Assembly (NCBI RefSeq): GCF_001194135.2
Contig: NC_068989.1
Location: 77,581,163 to 77,645,162 of the forward strand
DNA length: 64,000 nucleotides
From: Octopus bimaculoides
Taxonomy: Eukaryota
Direction of reading: 5' to 3'
Shown: in pieces, positions 3,455-50,200 of the stretch
Position numbering within the stretch: position 1 is the first letter of the stretch
How the letters are laid out: each line of letters begins with the position of its first letter
Notes under the pieces: generated by a model
What the model was told of the DNA's origin: nothing
What the model saw: only the letters and a program-made list of their open reading frames with translations
Databases searched by the model: none
Made by a program: the position numbers and the translations under genes

Positions 3455-3783
3455 AAAAACCTTCTTCGGTCACGTATGACCATAGAACTGCACCTCAGGT
3501 GCCCCCCCCCCTGTCCTGAGGGACAAATCTGGACGAGGCTGTTTATAGAAGGCCAGTAGTTACCCGTGCATACCAGCCTCTCCTCTCCACACCACCGATA
3601 TTGTCCAATGGAAAAGGAAAAGGGGCCGATACAGTTTGGCACCAGTGACGCCACAACTCATTTCTACACTTGAGTGAACTGGAGCAACATAAAATAAAAT
3701 GTCTTGCTCAAAAACAACAACGCACTACCTGGTCCGGGAATCGAACTCACTGCCTCATGATTGTGAGCCCGATGCTCTAACCA
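3455..3783 (-). mobile_element. SINE family B (tRNA head plus gcaagacact-type central domain)
   Basis: Minus strand has A box ggttagagcatcggg and B box gagttcgattcccgg; second copy follows at 3962-4273. Confidence 0.75.
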
Positions 3784-3961
3784 CACACACACACACCCAC
3801 ATATATGCATGTATGCATATACATATATACACATACACACACACAAACATATCTATGTGTAAAGTAACAGTTTTAGAGAAAAACCATTGGTTTCATATGT
3901 AGCGTGAACTAGACATTTCTTTAGTTTCTTTCAACGATAACTGTTCTGTGTGTGTATATAT

Positions 3962-4273
3962 TAGGGACCCCCATTCGGTCATGAGCGACCATGGCCTTGA
4001 ACATTCATTCCCTTCTGATGAACAAGTGAGGGTAAGTTGTTAATGGAAGACCACCAGTCACCCATGCTTACGCGCTTTCCTTCTCCATGCCACCGATATT
4101 GTCCAAGGGAAAGGTAAAAGCCTATGCCGTTTTGCACCAGTGACGTCACATTTTATTTCTACAGCTGAGTGAACTGCAGCGACATGAAATAAAGCGTCTT
4201 GCTCAAGAACACAATGCACAACTCGGTCCGGGAATCGAACTCAACCACACGATTGTAAGCCCGACGCTCTAAC
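3962..4273 (-). mobile_element. SINE family B, second tandem copy
   Basis: Shares ccaccgatattgtccaa...gcaccagtgacg...gagtgaactg...gtcttgctcaa...ccgggaatcgaactc with 3455-3783. Confidence 0.75.
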
Positions 4274-5070
4274 TATATACACACACACACACATACATAC
4301 ACGCACACACACACACACACACACACGTTCACTAACACACACATACTCACACATGCGCGCGCACACTCATAAATAGATACAAAGTGGAGAGACGGGAGGG
4401 GAACATTTGTGAGAAGTAATAAAAGCCAGTAAATGCGTGTTGAGGGCAATGTATGAGTGTACGCGTGTATACCTGTCTAAAATAGAGAAAACCCAGATTT
4501 CTTCATGCATCCACTAACATAGAATGCTGTAAGATATAACGCAAAGATGTACATCTGAAGAAAGCCACAAACAAATGAAACGAAAAACATTTATAGCTTG
4601 TGAGAGGAATTTTATCAGAGGTACGTTTCCTGTCTTTGAATGCGAGTTTTGTGTGCGTGCGTGTGTATGTGTGCGTGTGTATGTGTGTGTGCGTGCGTGT
4701 GTATGTGTGCGTGTGTATGTGTGTGTGCGTGTGCATATATATNNNNNNNNNNNNNNNNNNNNNNNNNNNNNNNNNNNNNNNNNNNNNNNNNNNNNNNNNN
4801 NNNNNNNNNNNNNNNNNNNNNNNNNNNNNNNNNNNNNNNNNNNNNNNNNNNNNNNNNNNNNNNNNNNNNNNNNNNNNNNNNNNNNNNNNNNNNNNNNNNN
4901 NNNNNNNNNNNNNNNNNNNNNNNNNNNNNNNNNNNNNNNNNNNNNNNNNNNNNNNNNNNNNNNNNNNNNNNNNNNNNNNNNNNNNNNNNNNNNNNNNNNN
5001 NNNNNNNNNNNNNNNNNNNNNNNNNNNNNNNNNNNNNNNNNNNNNNNNATTGTGTATAGAGGAATATATT

Positions 5071-7424: not shown

Positions 7425-8006
7425 TTATTTTCTACTCTAGGCACAAGGCCTGAAATTCTTGGGGAGGGAGCCAGTCTAGATCGACCTCAGTACGCAACTG
7501 GTAATTAATTTATCGACCTCGGCGAAATTTGAACTCAGAACATATGACATGAAATACCGCTAAGCATTTTGCCTAGCGTGCTAACGTTTCTTATTTCATT
7601 ATTGCCCACAAGGGGCTAAACATAGAGGGGACAAACAAGGACAGACAAGGAGATTAAGTCGATTACATCGACCCCAGTACGCAGCTGGTACTTAATTTAT
7701 CGACCTCGAAGGATGAAAAGCAAAGTCGACCTCGAATGAATTTGAACTTAGAACGTAACGGTAGACGAAATACCTATTTCTGTATTGCCCACAAGAGGCT
7801 AAACATAGAGGGGACAAACAAGGACAGACAAACGGGTTAAGTCGATTACATCGACCCCAGTGCGTAACTGGTACTTAATTTATCGACCCCGAAAGGATGA
7901 AAGGCAAAGTCAACCTCGGCGGAATTTGAACTCAGAACGTAACGGCAGACGAAATACCGCTAAGCATTTCGCCCGGCGTGCTAACGATTCTGCCAGCTCG
8001 CCGCCT
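7425..8006 (-). mobile_element. Trimeric Nin/Deu-like SINE composite
   Basis: Three successive units, each with tggtacttaatttatcgacc (or a variant); complete head at 8006. Confidence 0.85.
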
Positions 8007-11750: not shown

Positions 11751-12262
11751 GGTAAGAAAAGAATTATTAAACTAAAAACTTGGCTTTGTACTTTATTTAT
11801 ATATAAAATACTACAATTAACAGTAATTTTTTTTTTTTTACGGCAAGAGGCCAGCTAGTAATAGTTTCAAATGTAGGCACAAGTTCTGGAATTTCGGTTA
11901 GGAATTTGGTATATACCATTGACTTCAGTTCTTGACATTTACTTCATTTTATCCACCCTGGAGGTTTGAAATGGGGAAGTTAACACCAGCGGGAACTCGT
12001 CTAAGAAAAATTAAGGATACCTCGAAAATATATAGTAAAAGAATGCATAATGGTTCCTGATATAGGCACAGTGCCAGCAATTTCTTAAGGAAGACGGTTA
12101 GACGATATCAACGATACCAGCACTTGACTTGCGCTTTATGTTTCGGACCTTAGAGAAATGACAGGCAAAGGTGATTCGCTGGGATTTGAACTCATTTTAA
12201 CAAGGAATAATAATAATAATAATAATAATAATGATAATATTAATAATAATAATAATAATAAT

Positions 12263-12450
12263 ATCTCGTGAAGTACGTGGAACAAATAGGGGCTGAAATA
12301 AGGGTGGAGCACTTGTAGAAAACAGCACTGCTTGGAACCGCTTGAATACTCTGGAAGGAGCTCGAAAAATAAGAGGAGTTACCTTAGTTCACTGGTAGTG
12401 AACAGATGACACTGTAATACATCTCCAGCGTTAGAAGCTGTGCAAAAGCC
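12263..12450 (+). mobile_element. 3' end of R4/Dong-like non-LTR retrotransposon within (AAT)n
   Basis: Translates LVKYVEQIGAEIRVEHL*KTALLGTA*ILWKELEK*, matching the QKxALLGTARILRKVL C-terminus of RLE-type elements; (AAT)n on both sides. Confidence 0.75.
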
Positions 12451-12514
12451 AATACTACTACTACTACTACTACTACTAATAATAATAATAATAATAATAA
12501 TAGTAATAATAATA

Positions 12515-12726
12515 CTTTCTAACACAGGCAGAGTGTCACAAATTTTGGGGAGGGGTTGATTTCATCGATCTCATTGGCTAAAATTTCGTCTGATTACTTT
12601 ATGCTGTCGACTCGGAAGGTTCAAAGGTAAAGTTGACCTCGGCGGGATTTGAACTCAGAACTTAAACAGTACTCTAAATAAACAAATACCTGAGCAAGGA
12701 AGAGTAGTAGTAGTAGAAGTAGTTTC

Positions 12727-12770
<44 letters not shown>

Positions 12771-12980
12771 CTTTTCTCCTATATGCAGAAGGCTTGAAAC
12801 TGGTGGAGAGGGGCCAATCGATTACTTCGACTCCAGTGTCCAGCTCGTACAATTTTTATCGTCTTCCAAAGGATCAATTGCAAAGTGGACCTCGGAGGAA
12901 TTTGAACTCAGAATGTAAAGACGGACGAAAGACGCTGAGTATTTCGCCCGGCGTGCTAACGATTCTGCCAGCTCGCTACC

Positions 12981-13030
<50 letters not shown>

Positions 13031-13243
13031 CCTTTTTACTATAGGCAGAAAGCCTGAAATTTGGGGAGGGGGATAGTCGATTATATTGACCCCAATACTG
13101 AACTCGCACTTAATTTATTGACCCCGAAAGGATGAAAGGCAAATTCGACCTTGGCGGAATTTGAACTCAGAACGTAAAGACAGACGAAATACCGCTAAGC
13201 ATTTCGCCCGACGTGCTAACGAGCCTGCCAGCTCTCCGCCTCA
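12515..13243 (-). mobile_element. Cluster of three Nin/Deu-like SINEs (12515-12662, 12770-12982, 13031-13243) separated by (AAT)n
   Basis: Each has gacctcggcgg(a/g)atttgaactcagaa or a variant; two keep the head gattctgccagctcgc or a variant. Confidence 0.8.
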
Positions 13244-33656: not shown

Positions 33657-34202
33657 CGGCGAGCTGACAGAAATGTTAGCACGCCGGGCGAAATGCTTAG
33701 CGCTATTTCATCTGCCGCTACGTTCTGAGTTCAAATTCCGCCGAGGTCGGCTTTGCCTTTCATCCTTTCGTGGTCGATTAAATAAGTACCAGTTATGCAC
33801 TGGGGTCGATGTAATCGACTTAATCCCTTTGTCTGTTCTTGTTTGTCCCCTCTATGTTTAGCCCCTTGCAGGCATGGTCGACTTTGCCTTTCATCTTTCG
33901 GGGTCGATAAATTAAGTAGCAGTTACGCTCTGGGATCGATGTAATCGACTTAATCCCTCTGTCTGTCCTTGTTTGTCTTCTCTATTTTTAGCCCCTTGTG
34001 GGCAATAAAGAAATAAGAAACATTAGCGAAATGCTTAGCTGTATTTCGCCTGTCTTTACGTTCCGAGTTCAAAGTCCGCCGAGGTCGACTTTAGTTTTCG
34101 TTCTTTTGAGGTCTATAAATTAAGTACCAGTTGCGTACTGGTTCGATCTAATCGACTGTCCCTCTCCCCGAACATTTTGTGCCTTGTGCCTAGAGTAGAA
34201 AA
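33657..34202 (+). mobile_element. Trimeric Nin/Deu-like SINE composite, second locus
   Basis: Same unit and tail order as 7425-8006, opposite orientation. Confidence 0.85.
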
Positions 34203-41167: not shown

Positions 41168-41865
41168 GCATGTAGTCATGCTTTATTCAACGCATTCTTT
41201 GAATTGTCTCGGATATACTCTCTCTAAACTACTTATAATGCAAAGAAATGAACCGAGGATTTACCCATCGGATGAAATATATTGGGATTATTCTTTCTGG
41301 AAGAATCCTAGGTTGTACCTTACAATTCGATGCGATTAGTCATAAATTGGATTATATTTGAGTGCTTGGATGGTNNNNNNNNNNNNNNNNNNNNNNNNNN
41401 NNNNNNNNNNNNNNNNNNNNNNNNNNNNNNNNNNNNNNNNNNNNNNNNNNNNNNNNNNNNNNNNNNNNNNNNNNNNNNNNNNNNNNNNNNNNNNNNNNNN
41501 NNNNNNNNNNNNNNNNNNNNNNNNNNNNNNNNNNNNNNNNNNNNNNNNNNNNNNNNNNNNNNNNNNNNNNNNNNNNNNNNNNNNNNNNNNNNNNNNNNNN
41601 NNNNNNNNNNNNNNNNNNNNNNNNNNNNNNNNNNNNNNNNNNNNNNNNNNNNNNNNNNNNNNNNNNNNNNNNNNNNNNNNNNNNNNNNNNNNNNNNNNNN
41701 NNNNNNNNNNNNNNNNNNNNNNNNNNNNNNNNNNNNNNNNNNNNNNNNNNNNNNNNNNNNNNNNNNNNNNNNNNNNNNNNNNNNNNNNNNNNNNNNNNNN
41801 NNNNNNNNNNNNNNNNNNNNNNNNNNNNNNNNNNNNNNNNNNNNNNNNNNNNNNNNNNNNNNNNG

Positions 41866-42155
41866 GACGCCCAAAACGTTATTTCCATGATCATCTCAAG
41901 CGGTCACTCATTGTAAGCTGTGTCCGTCTCAATCGATCGCAAGCCTTGGCAGTTAATCGGAAGAGATGGAGGATCATGTGTGACGCTGGAGTTGAGCGCT
42001 TACAAACCGAACGCCAGAGATTGCATGAAATTAAAAGGGAAATGTCTTCATCGACATTATGTGGTTATTATTTCGGGGGGTCATTTTTGTGCCCTCTGTG
42101 CCAAAGGATCTGTCTGTTTCGTATCGGTCTTGTCAGTCATGTCGCTCCCATAAGA
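41866..42155 (+). pseudogene. RTE-clade LINE, 3' end of the ORF
   Basis: GRPKRYFHDHLKRSL...LAVNRKRWR...GV...FLCPLCQRICLFRIGLVSH matches the RTE C-terminus with a Cys/His motif. Confidence 0.8.
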
Positions 42156-42920
42156 AACGTGTTGGAGATAGAGAATGGTAGATGTTCAGGATCAATACGG
42201 CCATCACCTGTGGTAAGCAAGCAAAAGCCGATAAATGAAACACCACTTCAATACATAAGTAGATACATCACTCTCTCTCTCTTTGACTCTCTCTCTCTCT
42301 CTCTCTTTGACTCTCTCTCTCTCTCTCTCTCCCCTCTCCCCCTCTCTCTCATTCTTTCTTTATTTCTTCAATCTTGCAGCTTTCAGAGCTGGAGAGGGAC
42401 GGGTTTGCTAGTCCCAAGCTCAAACATACACGCATACACTTATTCATTTCATTCCATCACGTTAATAAAATGTTCTCTCAATATCTCTTCAACAAACAAA
42501 CAAACACACACACATACAGCCGATACATTTCCACACACCATACATATTCTCTCAGATGTTTCACGAGTACTTCTGTTCTCTGTTTATCTTATTTCCTATC
42601 TCCCTTCGTTCTCCTAACGCTCAGGCTGATACAGATAATCAACCTCCCTCTCACCATCACACACCATCTTCACTTTTCTATTGTTTTCTCTTTTTCTATT
42701 TGTATCTTCTTTGATTCTATACCTCCGCCCACTATATTTCTGTCTGATCTCTCTCTCTCTCTCTCACATATATATATATAAGGGCATTCTTGTATAGAAA
42801 TGCCCTTATATAAATAAATATATTCTAGGGGATAAATAATGGCTTCTTTCCCCTATGAGGTTTTTCTCACGCTAGCTACTTGGTAAGTTCTTGTAAAAGA
42901 TCTTATCCTATTATTGAATT

Positions 42921-47584: not shown

Positions 47585-48210
47585 TTCAAATCAGCATAAA
47601 CATATCGTAAATACGTTTTTCATTCCAAATATAATCGCCCACATGTTTCCTTCTTGAAACCAGTGTTCTGATTCATCGAGAAAAAAATTAGGTTCTTTAG
47701 AAGGGAAAAATGTTCAGGATGACTTTTCGACTTCGTCCCTGTTATCGAGTGATTTTTCCACTGGTAAAGTGTTTAAAAGACCTAAATAAACGAAAATCTG
47801 ACTGTGCTAGGGTCTGTTGATGGAAGATAAGGTAGAACTTCCTAAACTAATGAATTTATCTTTTCCTGGGTTATCTTGTAGAACCCACTGCTTTATTATC
47901 AACGGACAACGCATGACATATCTACCTCCCACCTACAAACATTTTTTTTCCAATCCGTGTGAGATGATCTTGCACAGTGGACCAGATATTATTAAGCCTC
48001 AAAGATAAGTCCCCAATATCTTGATACGGATCCTCTTCAGTTGCTGATTTCACTGTTTTATAATGGAGAACCGTTCTTTTACCTGATTGATATCCATCCA
48101 AAAATTAAAAATTACTGTTTTTGAATTTTCTAAACCACGAGAGCCTCATCGAATCATCGCACCACCAGGCTGTACAGAACAAATTTTCAATTGCTCATTT
48201 TGCCTTGTTG
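47585..48210 (-). pseudogene. mariner transposase relic, internally deleted
   Basis: ...EEDPY...LRLNNIWSTVQDHLTRIGKK (HTH) and DLAQSDFRLFRSF (degenerate SPDLAPSDF.LF). Confidence 0.7.
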
Positions 48211-48247
48211 CTCTTATGAAATTTGTAAAGTATGCAATACCGAATAT

Positions 48248-48306
48248 ACTGGTAGTGAACAGCTGACACTGTAGTACATCTCCAGCGTTAGAAACTGTGC
48301 AAAGGC
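48248..48306 (+). mobile_element. R4/Dong-like 3' UTR fragment
   Basis: Matches 12392-12450 (actggtagtgaacag.tgacactgta.tacatctccagcgttagaa.ctgtgcaaa). Confidence 0.7.
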
Positions 48307-48362
48307 AATAATAATATCGAAAAATACCTTAGGAATGAGAACCCAGGTTCGAAATCTCCCAA

Positions 48363-48408
48363 GACACCTGATGAAGGCTGGAGGGTATATCAGCCAAAAC
48401 GTTGTATT
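48363..48408 (+). ncRNA. Minimal type I hammerhead, copy 1 (G12 mutated to A)
   Basis: GACAC-CUGAUGA-A-GGCUG(loop)CAGCC-aAA-ACGU-U-GUAUU. Confidence 0.7.
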
Positions 48409-48508
48409 AGCAACAAACAAGATGAGGACAAATATCCGTCAAATGTAAATAATGTACATAATTCCTCATCTCTTAAATATAGAACTCTATTTTAAAAAAA
48501 AAGTCCAC

Positions 48509-48583
48509 GAGCATATGACGTAGTGGTTAAGAGTGCGAGATACTAACCCCATGATTCCGAGTTCGATTCCAGGCAGTGACCTG
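48509..48583 (+). promoter_or_regulatory. tRNA-derived Pol III internal promoter (SINE-type head)
   Basis: A box tgacgtagtggttaa (48516-48530), B box gttcgattcc (48561-48570), anticodon-like loop tactaa. Confidence 0.75.
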
Positions 48584-48670
48584 AATAATAACAACAATAA
48601 TATTAACAATAATAATAATAAATTCGAAAAATACCTTAGGAATGAGAACCCAGTTTCGAAATTTCCCGAA

Positions 48671-48716
48671 GACATCTGATGAAGGCTGGAGTGTATATCA
48701 GCCGAAACGTTGTGTT
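48671..48716 (+). ncRNA. Minimal type I hammerhead, copy 2 (core intact)
   Basis: GACAU-CUGAUGA-A-GGCUG(GAGUGUAUAU)CAGCC-GAA-ACGU-U-GUGUU; predicted cleavage after U48711. Confidence 0.8.
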
Positions 48717-48767
48717 AACTACAAACAAGATGAGGACAAATATCCGTCAAATGTAAATAATGTAAAT

Positions 48768-50200
48768 AGTTTTCCCTATTTTCTTCCACGTGCCGGTGTA
48801 AATGATTGAAATTTCACAACCAGTATCCAGTTGTAATCTAGCATTTACTTCGTTTACTTCCACGTGTACAAATTTCCTTATTTGGGAGTCGATTTTACTT
48901 TCTGCTGAGAGCACTTTACAATTTTTTTAAAATATGACCTCTGTAATTTTGTTCTGCAGTGTGAACTCTTGTGTTCAAATTCTTGACAACTGTAACACTT
49001 TTAGTTTTTAAAAGGACAATCTTTTCTGAAATGTTGGCCACCACATCCGTAACATGGATTAAGACCTCGCAATCTTCTTTGGTTATATTTTCTCGGTCGA
49101 CATATCTGTATTTTTGCGAAATCCTTTTTCTTGAATTTTTCTTACATCGTGTTCCAGGTTTACCATTCGTTGATACTCTTCTGCAACAGTCTAAATCTTG
49201 GTTCGCTTGTTCAAGTTCTGAAAGAATTCTTGTCCGTATTTCTGTATCTTCATATGAAGTAAGGCCTTGCACAAAAATGAAGCATTTAAACACATCAGGA
49301 GTAAGTTTTTAAGTTCAAAATTTTCACACATTCTGATGACTGTTCCTGCATACGTAATAAAGTCATCATCCTCTTTTTTAGTGAAATTCCAACACTCCAT
49401 TCGAGTGTGAAATAGAGAATTTTTATCGCTGAATATGTTAGACAGTAATTTGATTGTTTCCTGAAATCAAATTTCACTACACTTTTGTGGGCAATATGAA
49501 ATTACAGTATCTTTTTATGTTCAGATGGAGCTAATTAACGTAATAATAACCTTACGTTTTCTTCGGAATAATAACCTTACTTTTTCTTCGTCTGACCATA
49601 TCTTGTAATCTTCCTTAAAAATATCCTCGTACCTTCAGTAGTACGCTGCAAAAGATATGCCCTCCTCTCGGTTATAATTGAATTCTGTTATGATATCCGG
49701 TACGCCGTCTGGCGAAAACGAACTTATCGCATTTTCGGACTTCTTTGCGTATAGATACATTGATTATTGTTGTTGTTGTACTAGTTATTTCTGCTACTCT
49801 TATTGCTGTTCATGCTGTTGCTTTTATATTATTGAAGCTAATAGGTCTTTCAGCATTTAACAAGTTATATCATGAGCAAATTATTAAATGTCTTACGTGA
49901 GCTTCGAATTCCTCGTCGTCAGATTTTCTATCCTCCGCCTCCAGTGTCATAGTACCGCCACGATATTGTGCGGATGGTTTAGATACACTGTACCAGTGTT
50001 ATAACGATAAACAAGATAATGATGCAGTTATAATAACAACGTAACGAACCAACAATCTCTTCACGAACCAACAATCAATATTCCAAACGAACAAATCAAA
50101 CGACACCTTCCGATTTCATTACGAACTCAATTCGAACTAACGCACAAACTTCACTCCGACCGCAACTGTTTCTCGCAAGGGGGCGTCGTGACTCATCACA
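48768..50200 (-). mobile_element. Ty3/gypsy LTR retrotransposon relic: 5' LTR (49927-50200), PBS (49910-49921), gag, protease
   Basis: LTR begins TGTGATG; PBS TGACGACGAGGA (TGGCGACGAGG type); gag EFNYNREEGISFAAYY, FKCFIFVQGL...EIRTRILSELEQ; protease LQLDTG (48819-48827) then ISII...TWKKIG. Confidence 0.85.

What the first reader, a model, noticed from the sequence alone, without database searches (positions are those of the whole stretch)
48317..48764. Pol III-promoted, double-hammerhead retrozyme-like element (308-nt unit)
Seen in sequence: two ~140-bp direct repeats 308 bp apart, each with helix I (GACAY/GUGUU), CUGAUGA, a 5-bp helix II (GGCUG/CAGCC), GAAA and a loop-less palindromic helix III (ACGU). 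Between them lie a tRNA-like A/B-box promoter and (AAT)n. The unit has extra self-complementarity (agatgagga 48420/tcctcatct 48463; ctcttaa 48470/ttaagag 48527). Established: minimal type I hammerheads with palindromic helix III occur in Penelope-like elements and cleave as tandem dimers; non-LTR retrozymes give circular RNAs; schistosome SM-alpha repeats combine Pol III boxes with a hammerhead. Inference: this is a SINE-retrozyme hybrid. Cleavage after U48403 and U48711 would release a 308-nt monomer that carries its own promoter, could circularise, and could be reinserted by a Penelope RT. Copy 1 has G12 mutated to A, so this locus may be partly disabled. I cannot tell whether the family is already described.
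Basis: partly seen in the sequence, partly recalled or inferred. Interest (0 to 1): 0.88.

Follow-up and report, generated by a model that had tools for sequence, protein, structure and literature searches.

The report
Octopus SINE-like repeat carrying Penelope-type hammerhead
This is a decayed, head-to-tail 1.5-copy remnant of a small octopus retroelement that joins a tRNA-derived promoter module to the minimal hammerhead ribozyme typical of Penelope-like retrotransposons; it is a real and mildly unusual combination, but this copy is a fossil and the kind is largely known.

Summary
Two direct repeats (48307-48463 and 48614-48771, 92% identical, 308 nt apart) each carry CUGAUGA-A-GGCUGG...UCAGCC-(G/A)AAA-CG-UU. 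Between them lie a tRNA-like segment with A and B boxes at canonical spacing and an (AAT)n tract.

The ribozyme has the "minimal hammerhead" architecture of Penelope-like elements (PLEs), not the canonical type I hammerhead of animal retrozymes. Only copy 2 meets a full descriptor; 200 random sequences gave no hits. Copy 1 has G12A, a CpG-to-CpA change, and a helix I mismatch.

A third copy with the same head-(AAT)n-body order is the antisense terminal exon of an Octopus bimaculoides NUP42 gene model (E=1.9e-13), so the tRNA-like head belongs to the family.

The array is cut on the left by a mariner and abuts a truncated LTR-retrotransposon protease on the right, so termini and target-site duplications are lost. 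The 308-nt unit is not unusually structured (z=-0.2). A T4 run precedes each head.

Best reading: a Pol III-type, tRNA-headed SINE-like element with a PLE hammerhead module. It is analogous to schistosome Sm-alpha and probably PLE-mobilised. This locus cannot release a monomer. Circular RNA, Pol III use and the PLE partner are untested.

The parts
48307..48316 (+). Residual (AAT)n of the upstream unit (AATAATAATA). It lies directly next to the mariner end, so the upstream unit was cut here.
48317..48463 (+). Unit 1 body (repeat copy 1). It contains a B-box-like GGTTCGAAATC at 48346-48356 and hammerhead 1.
48363..48408 (+). Hammerhead 1, disabled. Helix I 5' strand GACAC 48363-67; CUGAUGA 48368-74; extra A 48375; helix II 48376-81/48390-95; AAAA 48396-99 (G12->A at 48396); CG 48400-01; U16.1 and U17 48402-03 (nominal cleavage after 48403); helix I 3' strand GUAUU 48404-08 (A.C mismatch).
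48464..48502 (+). Spacer present only once. It carries the 3' arm of the 9-bp hairpin (48463-48471), the only T4 run of the unit (48490-48493, a candidate Pol III terminator) and an A9 run (48494-48502).
48509..48580 (+). tRNA-derived head. A box TGACGTAGTGG 48516-48526; B box AGTTCGATTCC 48560-48570; T8-to-G53 spacing 45 nt as in tRNA. The stems are degenerate and this is not a tRNA gene.
48584..48621 (+). Internal imperfect (AAT)n microsatellite between head and body.
   Evidence: poly-Ile in P0001 at the same place
48622..48771 (+). Unit 2 body (repeat copy 2). It ends at the junction with the LTR-retrotransposon protease fragment.
48671..48716 (+). Hammerhead 2, intact by descriptor. GACAU 48671-75; CUGAUGA 48676-82; extra A 48683; helix II 48684-89/48698-703; GAAA 48704-07; CG 48708-09; UU 48710-11 (cleavage after U48711); GUGUU 48712-16.
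47600..48306 (-). Left flank, not part of the element: an internally deleted mariner-like transposon. Its 59-64-nt end (48248-48306/10) recurs at 12391-12454.
48772..49800 (-). Right flank, not part of the element: an LTR-retrotransposon gag (DUF7083), CCHC knuckles and the first ~37 residues of its aspartic protease. Homology stops at 48768-48774.

Best explanation
The locus is a decayed head-to-tail array of at least 1.5 units of 308 nt. The units belong to a cephalopod SINE-like non-autonomous retroelement.

One unit contains, in order:
- a short spacer with a T4 run and an A9 run;
- a tRNA-derived head with Pol III A and B boxes;
- an internal (AAT)n tract;
- a body of about 150 nt that carries a Penelope-type minimal hammerhead in the same orientation.

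Proposed life cycle (inferred, not shown). The head drives transcription. More-than-unit transcripts from tandem copies bring two hammerheads together, and they cleave as a double hammerhead through the palindromic ACGU helix III. The unit-length RNA, linear or ligated, is copied by the RT/GIY-YIG machinery of an octopus Penelope-like element, which recognises the hammerhead-bearing module. Reinsertion yields partial tandems, as for PLE pseudo-LTRs.

This particular copy is a fossil. It shows 8% divergence between units, G12A in core 1 and a helix I mismatch. A mariner has inserted into its (AAT)n, and its outer ends are lost.
For: Shown:
- Repeats and period.
- A full descriptor hits only copy 2 in 64 kb and nothing in 200 composition-matched random sequences.
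- The same core and helix II occur in metagenome contigs about 100-1500 nt downstream of RT+GIY-YIG ORFs. In L012 the motif lies between two tandem PLE ORFs.
- Across 15 distinct sequences helix I complementarity exceeds all 2000 partner permutations.
- A and B boxes sit at tRNA spacing on the same strand as the ribozyme. The head is about 70% alignable to another tRNA-derived SINE head in the window.
- A third copy with the same head-(AAT)n-body order exists in O. bimaculoides (P0001; E=1.9e-13; sequence).
- No ORF or PLE remnant lies between the repeats.

From the literature:
- Active Penelope families exist in Octopus (PMC13282606).
- PLEs and Sm-alpha need more-than-unit tandems (PMC4209133, PMC6765202).
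- PLE insertions form partial tandems (PMC8557442, PMC8969392).
Against: - Only three copies were seen, and one only as protein. No family consensus, termini or target-site duplications are available.
- The outer ends are destroyed by a mariner and a truncated LTR element.
- ARAGORN and the Rfam tRNA model do not recognise the head.
- The T4 at 48490-48493 would hinder multimeric Pol III transcripts.
- The unit is not unusually structured.
- The nearest-neighbour energy of the double-hammerhead fold (-24.3 kcal/mol) is worse than that of two monomers (-26) or an alternative dimer (-34).
- Differences between the units are no rarer inside the ribozyme (4/47) than outside it (13/158 overall).
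- No octopus PLE could be retrieved to test 3'-end homology.
Confidence: 0.55

Rival explanations
1. This is a classical LINE-mobilised tRNA SINE running from the head at 48503 to ...CTATTTT-A9. Its body merely contains a captured, functionless PLE hammerhead fragment. The tandem arose because a second copy inserted into the A-rich tail of the first. No ribozyme processing and no PLE are involved.
For: The T4+A9 run sits exactly between the end of unit 1 and the head of unit 2, like a SINE 3' end followed by a new 5' end. The ribozyme shows no extra conservation between the copies. L1-Tx1, CR1, RTE and Dong-R4 LINEs are active in Octopus (PMC13282606). Min-HHRs cleave poorly in vitro (PMC4209133).
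Against: The downstream copy would then lack its last ~39 nt and its A tail, and 3' truncation is not what target-primed reverse transcription produces. With TTTT before A9, the A run would not be in a Pol III transcript. Copy 2 still satisfies the full descriptor after ~8% divergence, and the inferred ancestor has a perfect 5-bp helix I.
Confidence: 0.2
2. There is no composite unit. A hammerhead-bearing PLE-derived element of ~190 nt targets (AAT)n microsatellites and inserted twice. One insertion went into the (AAT)n tail of an unrelated mini tRNA-SINE.
For: Both bodies, and the P0001 copy, start right after an (AAT)n tract. PLEs show insertion bias for microsatellites (PMC8557442). Elsewhere in the window SINE units are chained through (TAA)n tracts (12206-13264).
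Against: In both cases where the sequence upstream of (AAT)n can be read (unit 2 and P0001) it is the same rare head. This head has no other copy in the window, whereas the window's abundant SINE families are never the neighbour. Two hits within 308 nt plus a 3'-truncated second copy need more events than one tandem.
Confidence: 0.12
3. The two repeats are the pseudo-LTRs of a degraded autonomous Penelope-like element that lost its ORF by deletion. A SINE inserted between them.
For: Min-HHRs map to PLE pseudo-LTRs (PMC4209133), and the same core is seen next to RT+GIY-YIG ORFs.
Against: Only 150 nt separate the repeats. There is no RT or GIY-YIG trace in the window by tblastn and no relevant ORF. 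The head-(AAT)n-body junction recurs in an independent copy.
Confidence: 0.08
4. The hammerhead-like motif is a chance match in an ordinary repeat.
For: Min-HHR descriptors are short. Rfam gives no hit.
Against: There were 0 descriptor hits in 200 random sequences. The motif has all four non-descriptor hallmarks of PLE min-HHRs. Identical cores occur beside PLE ORFs with covarying helix I. Rfam also misses the motif in bona fide PLEs, so its silence is uninformative.
Confidence: 0.02

Closest known systems
Minimal type I hammerheads of Penelope-like elements (Cervera & de la Pena 2014, PMC4209133; Lunse, Weinberg & Breaker 2017, cited in PMC7761336)
   Same: Same core. Both have an extra nucleotide between A9 and G10.1, a G10.1-C11.1 pair, no loop 3 with palindromic ACGU, a 4-5 bp helix I, an open helix I (type I) and occurrence in closely spaced direct copies. 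The identical core and helix II were found beside RT+GIY-YIG ORFs.
   Different: Here there is no PLE ORF. The motif sits in a 308-nt unit that also has a tRNA-like Pol III module and an internal microsatellite.
Sm-alpha / Sj-alpha SINE-like retroposons of schistosomes (Ferbeyre et al. 1998 and Laha et al. 2000, as summarised in PMC6765202 and PMC2770079)
   Same: A tRNA-derived Pol III promoter module and a hammerhead lie in one short (~300 nt) non-coding unit, in the same orientation and often in tandem. Tandem copies are needed because cleavage separates promoter and ribozyme.
   Different: Sm-alpha carries a canonical type I hammerhead, which Rfam Hammerhead_1 detects and which is active as described. 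This element carries the loop-less PLE-type variant, which Rfam does not detect. The host phylum differs, an internal (AAT)n is present, and no sequence homology was tested.
Metazoan non-LTR retrozymes (Cervera & de la Pena 2020, PMC7229834; Li, Clavereau & Pollet 2026 preprint, 10.64898/2026.07.22.740005)
   Same: Non-coding units of ~150-450 nt, low GC (34% here), head-to-tail repeats each with a type I hammerhead, and a proposed dependence on PLEs.
   Different: Retrozymes have canonical hammerheads with loop 1-loop 2 contacts and circular RNAs predicted to be highly self-paired. This unit has a minimal hammerhead and ordinary foldability (z=-0.2). No tRNA-like promoter is mentioned in the two retrozyme papers cited under this entry.
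tRNA-derived SINEs of octopus (Ohshima & Okada 1994, cited in PMC10886601) and the SINE families seen in this window
   Same: A tRNA-derived head with A and B boxes, association with (AAT)/(ATT)-type microsatellites, and a length of about 300 nt.
   Different: No hammerhead was found in the other SINE copies of the window. The microsatellite is internal rather than a 3' tail.

Membership tests
PLE-type minimal hammerhead (min-HHR) | Conserved core CUGANGA ... GAAA with H17 not G | tested here: met
   Copy 2 has CUGAUGA, GAAA and U17. Copy 1 fails through G12->A at 48396, a CpG-to-CpA change.
PLE-type minimal hammerhead (min-HHR) | [quoted passage not shown] | tested here: met
   A48375/A48683, then G...C closing helix II in both copies. 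Feature list from PMC4209133.
PLE-type minimal hammerhead (min-HHR) | No helix III loop; palindromic 15.2-16.2, so that helix III forms only between two copies | tested here: met
   A-CG-U is followed directly by U17 in both copies.
PLE-type minimal hammerhead (min-HHR) | Short helix I (4-5 bp) and a relatively long helix II | tested here: met
   Copy 2 has a 5-bp helix I and a 6-bp helix II. Copy 1 has a mismatch in helix I. Helix I covaries across 15 sequences sharing this core.
PLE-type minimal hammerhead (min-HHR) | Self-cleavage as a dimer | not testable with these tools
   Only an energy estimate is available: double-hammerhead fold -24.3 kcal/mol versus -26 for two monomers.
Autonomous Penelope-like element | RT plus GIY-YIG ORF between the pseudo-LTRs | tested here: not met
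   About 150 nt lie between the repeats. There is no ORF and no tblastn hit to PLE ORFs anywhere in the window.
Metazoan non-LTR retrozyme | Tandem non-coding repeats of ~150-450 bp with low GC, each with a hammerhead | tested here: met
   308-nt period, 34% GC, and at least 1.5 units, with the array truncated on both sides.
Metazoan non-LTR retrozyme | Canonical type I hammerhead with helix III and loop 1-loop 2 tertiary contacts | tested here: not met
   Loop-less helix III and open helix I. There is no Rfam Hammerhead_1 hit even at E<=10. Definition from PMC7229834.
Metazoan non-LTR retrozyme | Unit RNA predicted to be stable and highly self-paired | tested here: not met
   MFE -47.3 versus shuffles -46.5 +/- 4.1, z=-0.20. 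The minus strand gives z=-0.18.
Metazoan non-LTR retrozyme | Expression as ~unit-length linear and circular RNA | not testable with these tools
   No RNA data are available here.
tRNA-derived SINE | Internal Pol III A and B boxes at tRNA-like spacing | tested here: met
   TGACGTAGTGG (10/11 of TRGCNNAGTGG) and AGTTCGATTCC, with T8-to-G53 = 45 nt.
tRNA-derived SINE | Head recognisably derived from a tRNA | tested here: inconclusive
   There is no ARAGORN hit on this strand, even at relaxed thresholds, and no Rfam tRNA hit. The head is ~70% alignable to another tRNA-derived SINE head at 3680-3810 and 4174-4304.
tRNA-derived SINE | Dispersed multi-copy family with defined termini and target-site duplications | tested here: inconclusive
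   One further copy is known, from O. bimaculoides and at protein level only. The termini at this locus are destroyed.
tRNA-derived SINE | 3' region shared with the autonomous partner | not testable with these tools
   No octopus PLE or LINE DNA is reachable. A PLE protein search returned insect lineages only.
Sm-alpha-like SINE with hammerhead | Pol III promoter module and hammerhead co-oriented in one short unit, found in tandem | tested here: met
   The description of Sm-alpha comes from PMC6765202.
Sm-alpha-like SINE with hammerhead | Canonical, monomer- or trans-active type I hammerhead | tested here: not met
   This is a minimal variant, with no Rfam Hammerhead_1 match.

The most novel reading that the evidence does not exclude
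Octopods harbour a previously unclassified SINE class. A tRNA-derived Pol III head is fused to the hammerhead-bearing terminal module of Penelope-like elements, and the class is propagated by PLE reverse transcriptase through more-than-unit or circular RNA. Such 'tRNA-PLE' SINEs would account for part of the thousands of orphan minimal hammerheads dispersed in animal genomes. They would also extend the schistosome Sm-alpha design to molluscs.
Probability: 0.3. Interest if true: 0.55.

Novelty: new variant of a known kind. Interest (0 to 1): 0.4.

Why it matters
Minimal hammerheads number in the thousands per animal genome, and most are "orphans" assumed to be truncated PLEs (PMC4209133). A family that links one to its own Pol III promoter would show that some orphans are riders on SINE-like non-autonomous elements. 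It would give a tractable case for three questions: whether PLE reverse transcriptases recognise the hammerhead module, whether tandem or circular templates are needed, and what the ribozyme does in PLE biology, which remains unknown. It would also add a partner type (PLE) to SINE classification outside flatworms. The locus itself is a decayed fossil. The value lies in the family, which must first be checked against Repbase and Dfam.

Tried and rejected
- Rfam at gathering threshold over the window and at E<=10 over the locus gave no hammerhead or tRNA hit. A control showed that Rfam also misses the motif in bona fide PLEs, so this is a blind spot and not evidence.
- ARAGORN found no tRNA. At relaxed thresholds it only proposed weak tRNA-like folds on the opposite strand over the ribozyme body, which I judged spurious.
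- BLASTN of the unit against the window found no further copies, only microsatellite hits.
- Exact-product look-ups of three window ORFs and of P0001 found nothing on record.
- Family-specific DNA patterns in genome contigs and viral contigs gave 0 hits.
- The metagenome scan with the ribozyme pattern gave 21 loci. They come from other hosts and have unrelated flanks. They were useful as PLE controls but are not family copies.
- Protein-space searches with antisense ORFs of the element returned only P0001.
- I first read the left flank as the continuation of the retroviral-type protease. This was rejected. Pfam and homolog alignments end at the junction, and the flank is a mariner end that recurs at 12391-12454.
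- A search for an octopus PLE to compare 3' ends, seeded with the L002 PLE ORF, returned insect-lineage PLEs only.
- tblastn of PLE ORFs against the window found no remnant.
- The papers by Ferbeyre et al. 1998 and Lunse et al. 2017 are not held. I relied on how reviews summarise them.

Full report
**1. What is in the sequence**

The window is eukaryotic: 33% GC, 6451 N, dense microsatellites and many tRNA-derived SINE copies.

At the reported place there are two direct repeats, 48307-48463 and 48614-48771. They show 13 differences in 158 aligned columns and a start-to-start spacing of 307-308.

The 36-nt string CTGATGAAGGCTGGAGNGTATATCAGCCRAAACGTT occurs exactly twice in 64 kb and never in 100 shuffles.

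**2. The ribozyme**

Each repeat reads as follows:
- helix I 5' strand GACAY;
- CUGAUGA;
- one extra A;
- a 6-bp helix II, GGCUGG(8-nt loop)UCAGCC;
- GAAA in copy 2 and AAAA in copy 1;
- C15.2-G16.2, U16.1, U17;
- helix I 3' strand.

This is the architecture Cervera and de la Pena defined for the minimal hammerheads of Penelope-like elements. [quoted passage not shown]

I wrote a descriptor that demands all of these features. It finds only copy 2 (48676-48711) on either strand of the window and nothing in 200 composition-matched random sequences. Copy 1 fails for two reasons: G12 is A (48396, a CpG-to-CpA change) and helix I has an A.C mismatch.

Rfam reports nothing. It also reports nothing for the same motif in bona fide PLEs, so its silence is a blind spot.

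**3. Independent support that this core is a PLE ribozyme**

A scan of metagenome contigs for the core plus the helix II stem returned 21 loci with unrelated flanks.
- In L002 the motif lies downstream of an ORF with RVT_1 and GIY-YIG domains.
- In L003, L008 and L012 it lies about 100 nt after a GIY-YIG-containing ORF.
- In L012 it sits between two tandem PLE ORFs.
- The L002 ORF has 458 relatives at E<=1e-10. Those listed that carry an organism name are mostly from insects.

Across the 15 distinct sequences, helix I differs in sequence but stays complementary. The mean run is 2.9 bp, against 0.9 bp for permuted partners, and 0 of 2000 permutations reach the observed value.

**4. The tRNA-like head**

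Between the repeats, on the same strand as the ribozyme, lie TGACGTAGTGG (48516-48526; 10/11 matches to the A-box consensus) and AGTTCGATTCC (48560-48570; B box). The T8-to-G53 distance is 45 nt, as in tRNAs.

The stems are degenerate. ARAGORN and the Rfam tRNA model do not call the segment. It is, however, about 70% alignable to the head of another tRNA-derived SINE at 3680-3810 and 4174-4304.

It is therefore a SINE-type head and not a tRNA gene. Pol III use is an inference from the boxes.

**5. Is the head part of the family?**

Protein-space searches with antisense ORFs of the element found one hit, UniRef A0A0L8FR24, an Octopus bimaculoides gene model named nucleoporin NUP42 (E=1.9e-13 and 80% identity over 46-49 residues).

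Its last 50 residues are YPSSGVLGKFRTWVLIPKVFFDAIIIIIIIIIQVTAWNRTRNLGVSSLCS. They are collinear with the antisense translation of unit 2:
- PSS covers CUGAUGA;
- the poly-Ile run covers (AAT)n;
- WNRT covers the B box;
- the stop codon falls at the same place.

An independent copy therefore has the same head-(AAT)n-body order.

The hit also places the window in an octopod. So does the best relative of the flanking gag, from Octopus sinensis at 50% identity.

**6. Context and boundaries**

On the right, the minus strand encodes an LTR-retrotransposon gag (DUF7083, E=6e-10), CCHC knuckles and the first ~37 residues of an aspartic protease. Homology to intact relatives stops at 48768-48774.

On the left is an internally deleted mariner-like element on the minus strand. 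Its terminal 59-64 nt (48248-48306/10) recur at 12391-12454, in both places followed by TA-containing microsatellite.

The AATAATAATA left of unit 1 is therefore what remains of the (AAT)n of an upstream unit that the mariner split. The rest of that unit, the other mariner end and the remainder of the LTR element are all missing. The array was at least 1.5 units long, and its true termini and target-site duplications cannot be recovered here.

**7. How it most likely works (inferred)**

The unit has exactly one T4 run (48490-48493). It lies just before an A9 run and the head. A Pol III transcript from a head would therefore run through (AAT)n, the body and the ribozyme and stop ~80 nt past the cleavage site.

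Such a transcript lacks the 45 nt upstream of the head. Only a more-than-unit transcript, made by leaky T4 read-through or by Pol II, or a circular template can carry a whole unit. This is the logic described for PLEs and for Sm-alpha (PMC4209133; PMC6765202).

Two hammerheads in one transcript could pair their ACGU tetrads and cleave as a double hammerhead. The nearest-neighbour energy of that fold is unfavourable: -24.3 kcal/mol, against -26 for two monomers and -34 for an alternative dimer. This fits the low in vitro activity reported for min-HHRs.

The 308-nt unit is no more structured than shuffles (z=-0.20 and -0.18). That is unlike retrozyme circular RNAs (PMC7229834).

In the double-hammerhead geometry each active site is composite. 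Core 1, which is dead through G12A, would serve the U48711 site. Core 2 would serve U48403 through a mismatched helix I. This locus should therefore not release a monomer.

The differences between the units are spread evenly, with 4 of 47 ribozyme positions changed against 13 of 158 overall. That is consistent with neutral decay after one duplication-by-insertion event.

**8. Rivals**

- **A classical LINE-mobilised SINE with a passenger hammerhead, the second copy inserted in the A tail of the first.** The T4-A9 boundary fits this. It also needs a 3'-truncated second copy and an A run that Pol III would not transcribe.
- **An (AAT)n-targeting hammerhead element inserted twice beside an unrelated mini-SINE.** This is disfavoured because the same rare head precedes the body in both readable cases.
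- **Pseudo-LTRs of a collapsed autonomous PLE.** There is no RT or GIY-YIG trace.
- **Chance.** This is excluded.

**9. Comparison with what is known**

- As a ribozyme it is a member of the PLE min-HHR class.
- As an element it works most like schistosome Sm-alpha, which combines a tRNA-derived Pol III module with a hammerhead in tandem units. It differs in carrying the minimal rather than the canonical hammerhead.
- It fails two defining features of animal non-LTR retrozymes.
- Full-text searches found no paper that links octopus with hammerhead-bearing SINEs.
- Repbase and Dfam could not be queried, so prior description as an unclassified SINE or Penelope fragment cannot be excluded.
- O. 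vulgaris has 30 recently active Penelope families and about 900 SINE families, most of them unclassified (PMC13282606). Both a partner element and an unnoticed family are therefore plausible.

**10. Verdict**

The finding is a new variant of known kinds, seen here as a fossil copy, and its interest is moderate. No step had to be referred.

Noticed in passing
P0001 (UniRef A0A0L8FR24, Octopus bimaculoides 'nucleoporin NUP42'), residues 145-194: The C-terminal ~50 residues of this gene model are the antisense translation of a copy of the element (ribozyme core, (AAT)n as poly-Ile, B box). This is either exonisation of the repeat as a terminal exon or an annotation artefact.
   Followed up: partly
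window 12206-13264: A chain of four to five SINE-like units of ~190-215 nt, each separated by a (TAA)n/(AAT)n tract (period ~255-260). Three are copies of the window's common tRNA-derived SINE in minus orientation. This suggests repeated insertion into (TAA)n tails. Dong-R4 LINEs are active in octopus according to PMC13282606. That Dong-type elements target (TAA)n is recalled from my own knowledge and was not checked.
   Followed up: partly
window 12391-12454 and 48248-48310: The same 64-nt sequence (92% identical) ends at ...GTGCAAA(G/A)GC(C)AA|TA in both places, next to microsatellite. It is interpreted as the terminal region of a mariner-like element or its MITE derivative.
   Followed up: partly
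window 47600-48306 (minus strand): Internally deleted mariner-like transposase remnant: a weak HTH_48 match and a C-terminal ...DFRLFRSFKHF... motif. No opposite terminal repeat was found.
   Followed up: partly
window 48772-49800 (minus strand): LTR-retrotransposon fragment: gag with DUF7083, two CCHC knuckles and the N-terminal third of an aspartic protease, with several frameshifts and stops. The closest relative is Octopus sinensis LOC115227624 (50% identity). The remainder of pol is absent from the window.
   Followed up: yes
window 48346-48356 and 48654-48664: A second B-box-like motif (GGTTCGAAATC, decayed to GTTTCGAAATT in copy 2) lies inside the body, ~20 nt upstream of the hammerhead. 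The body may itself descend from a tRNA-like sequence. Relaxed ARAGORN instead proposes weak tRNA-like folds on the opposite strand here.
   Followed up: partly
window 3680-3810 and 4174-4304 (minus strand): Two copies, 494 nt apart, of another tRNA-derived SINE family. Both are preceded by (GT)n, and their B box AGTTCGATTCC is identical to that of the hammerhead element's head.
   Followed up: partly
L004, L005, L009, L017 (metagenome contigs): Some min-HHRs with the same core have G at the nominal position 17. In L004 and L005 helix I pairs in a register shifted by one. These are either inactive copies or a variant cleavage-site register.
   Followed up: no
window 41358-42617 (plus strand): A long ORF interrupted by an N gap. 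Its C-terminal part looks like the tail of a non-LTR retrotransposon ORF with a Cys/His motif. It was not analysed.
   Followed up: no
window 7592-7958 and 33745-33998: Near-tandem duplications (periods 183 and 130) made of pieces of the common tRNA-derived SINE.
   Followed up: no
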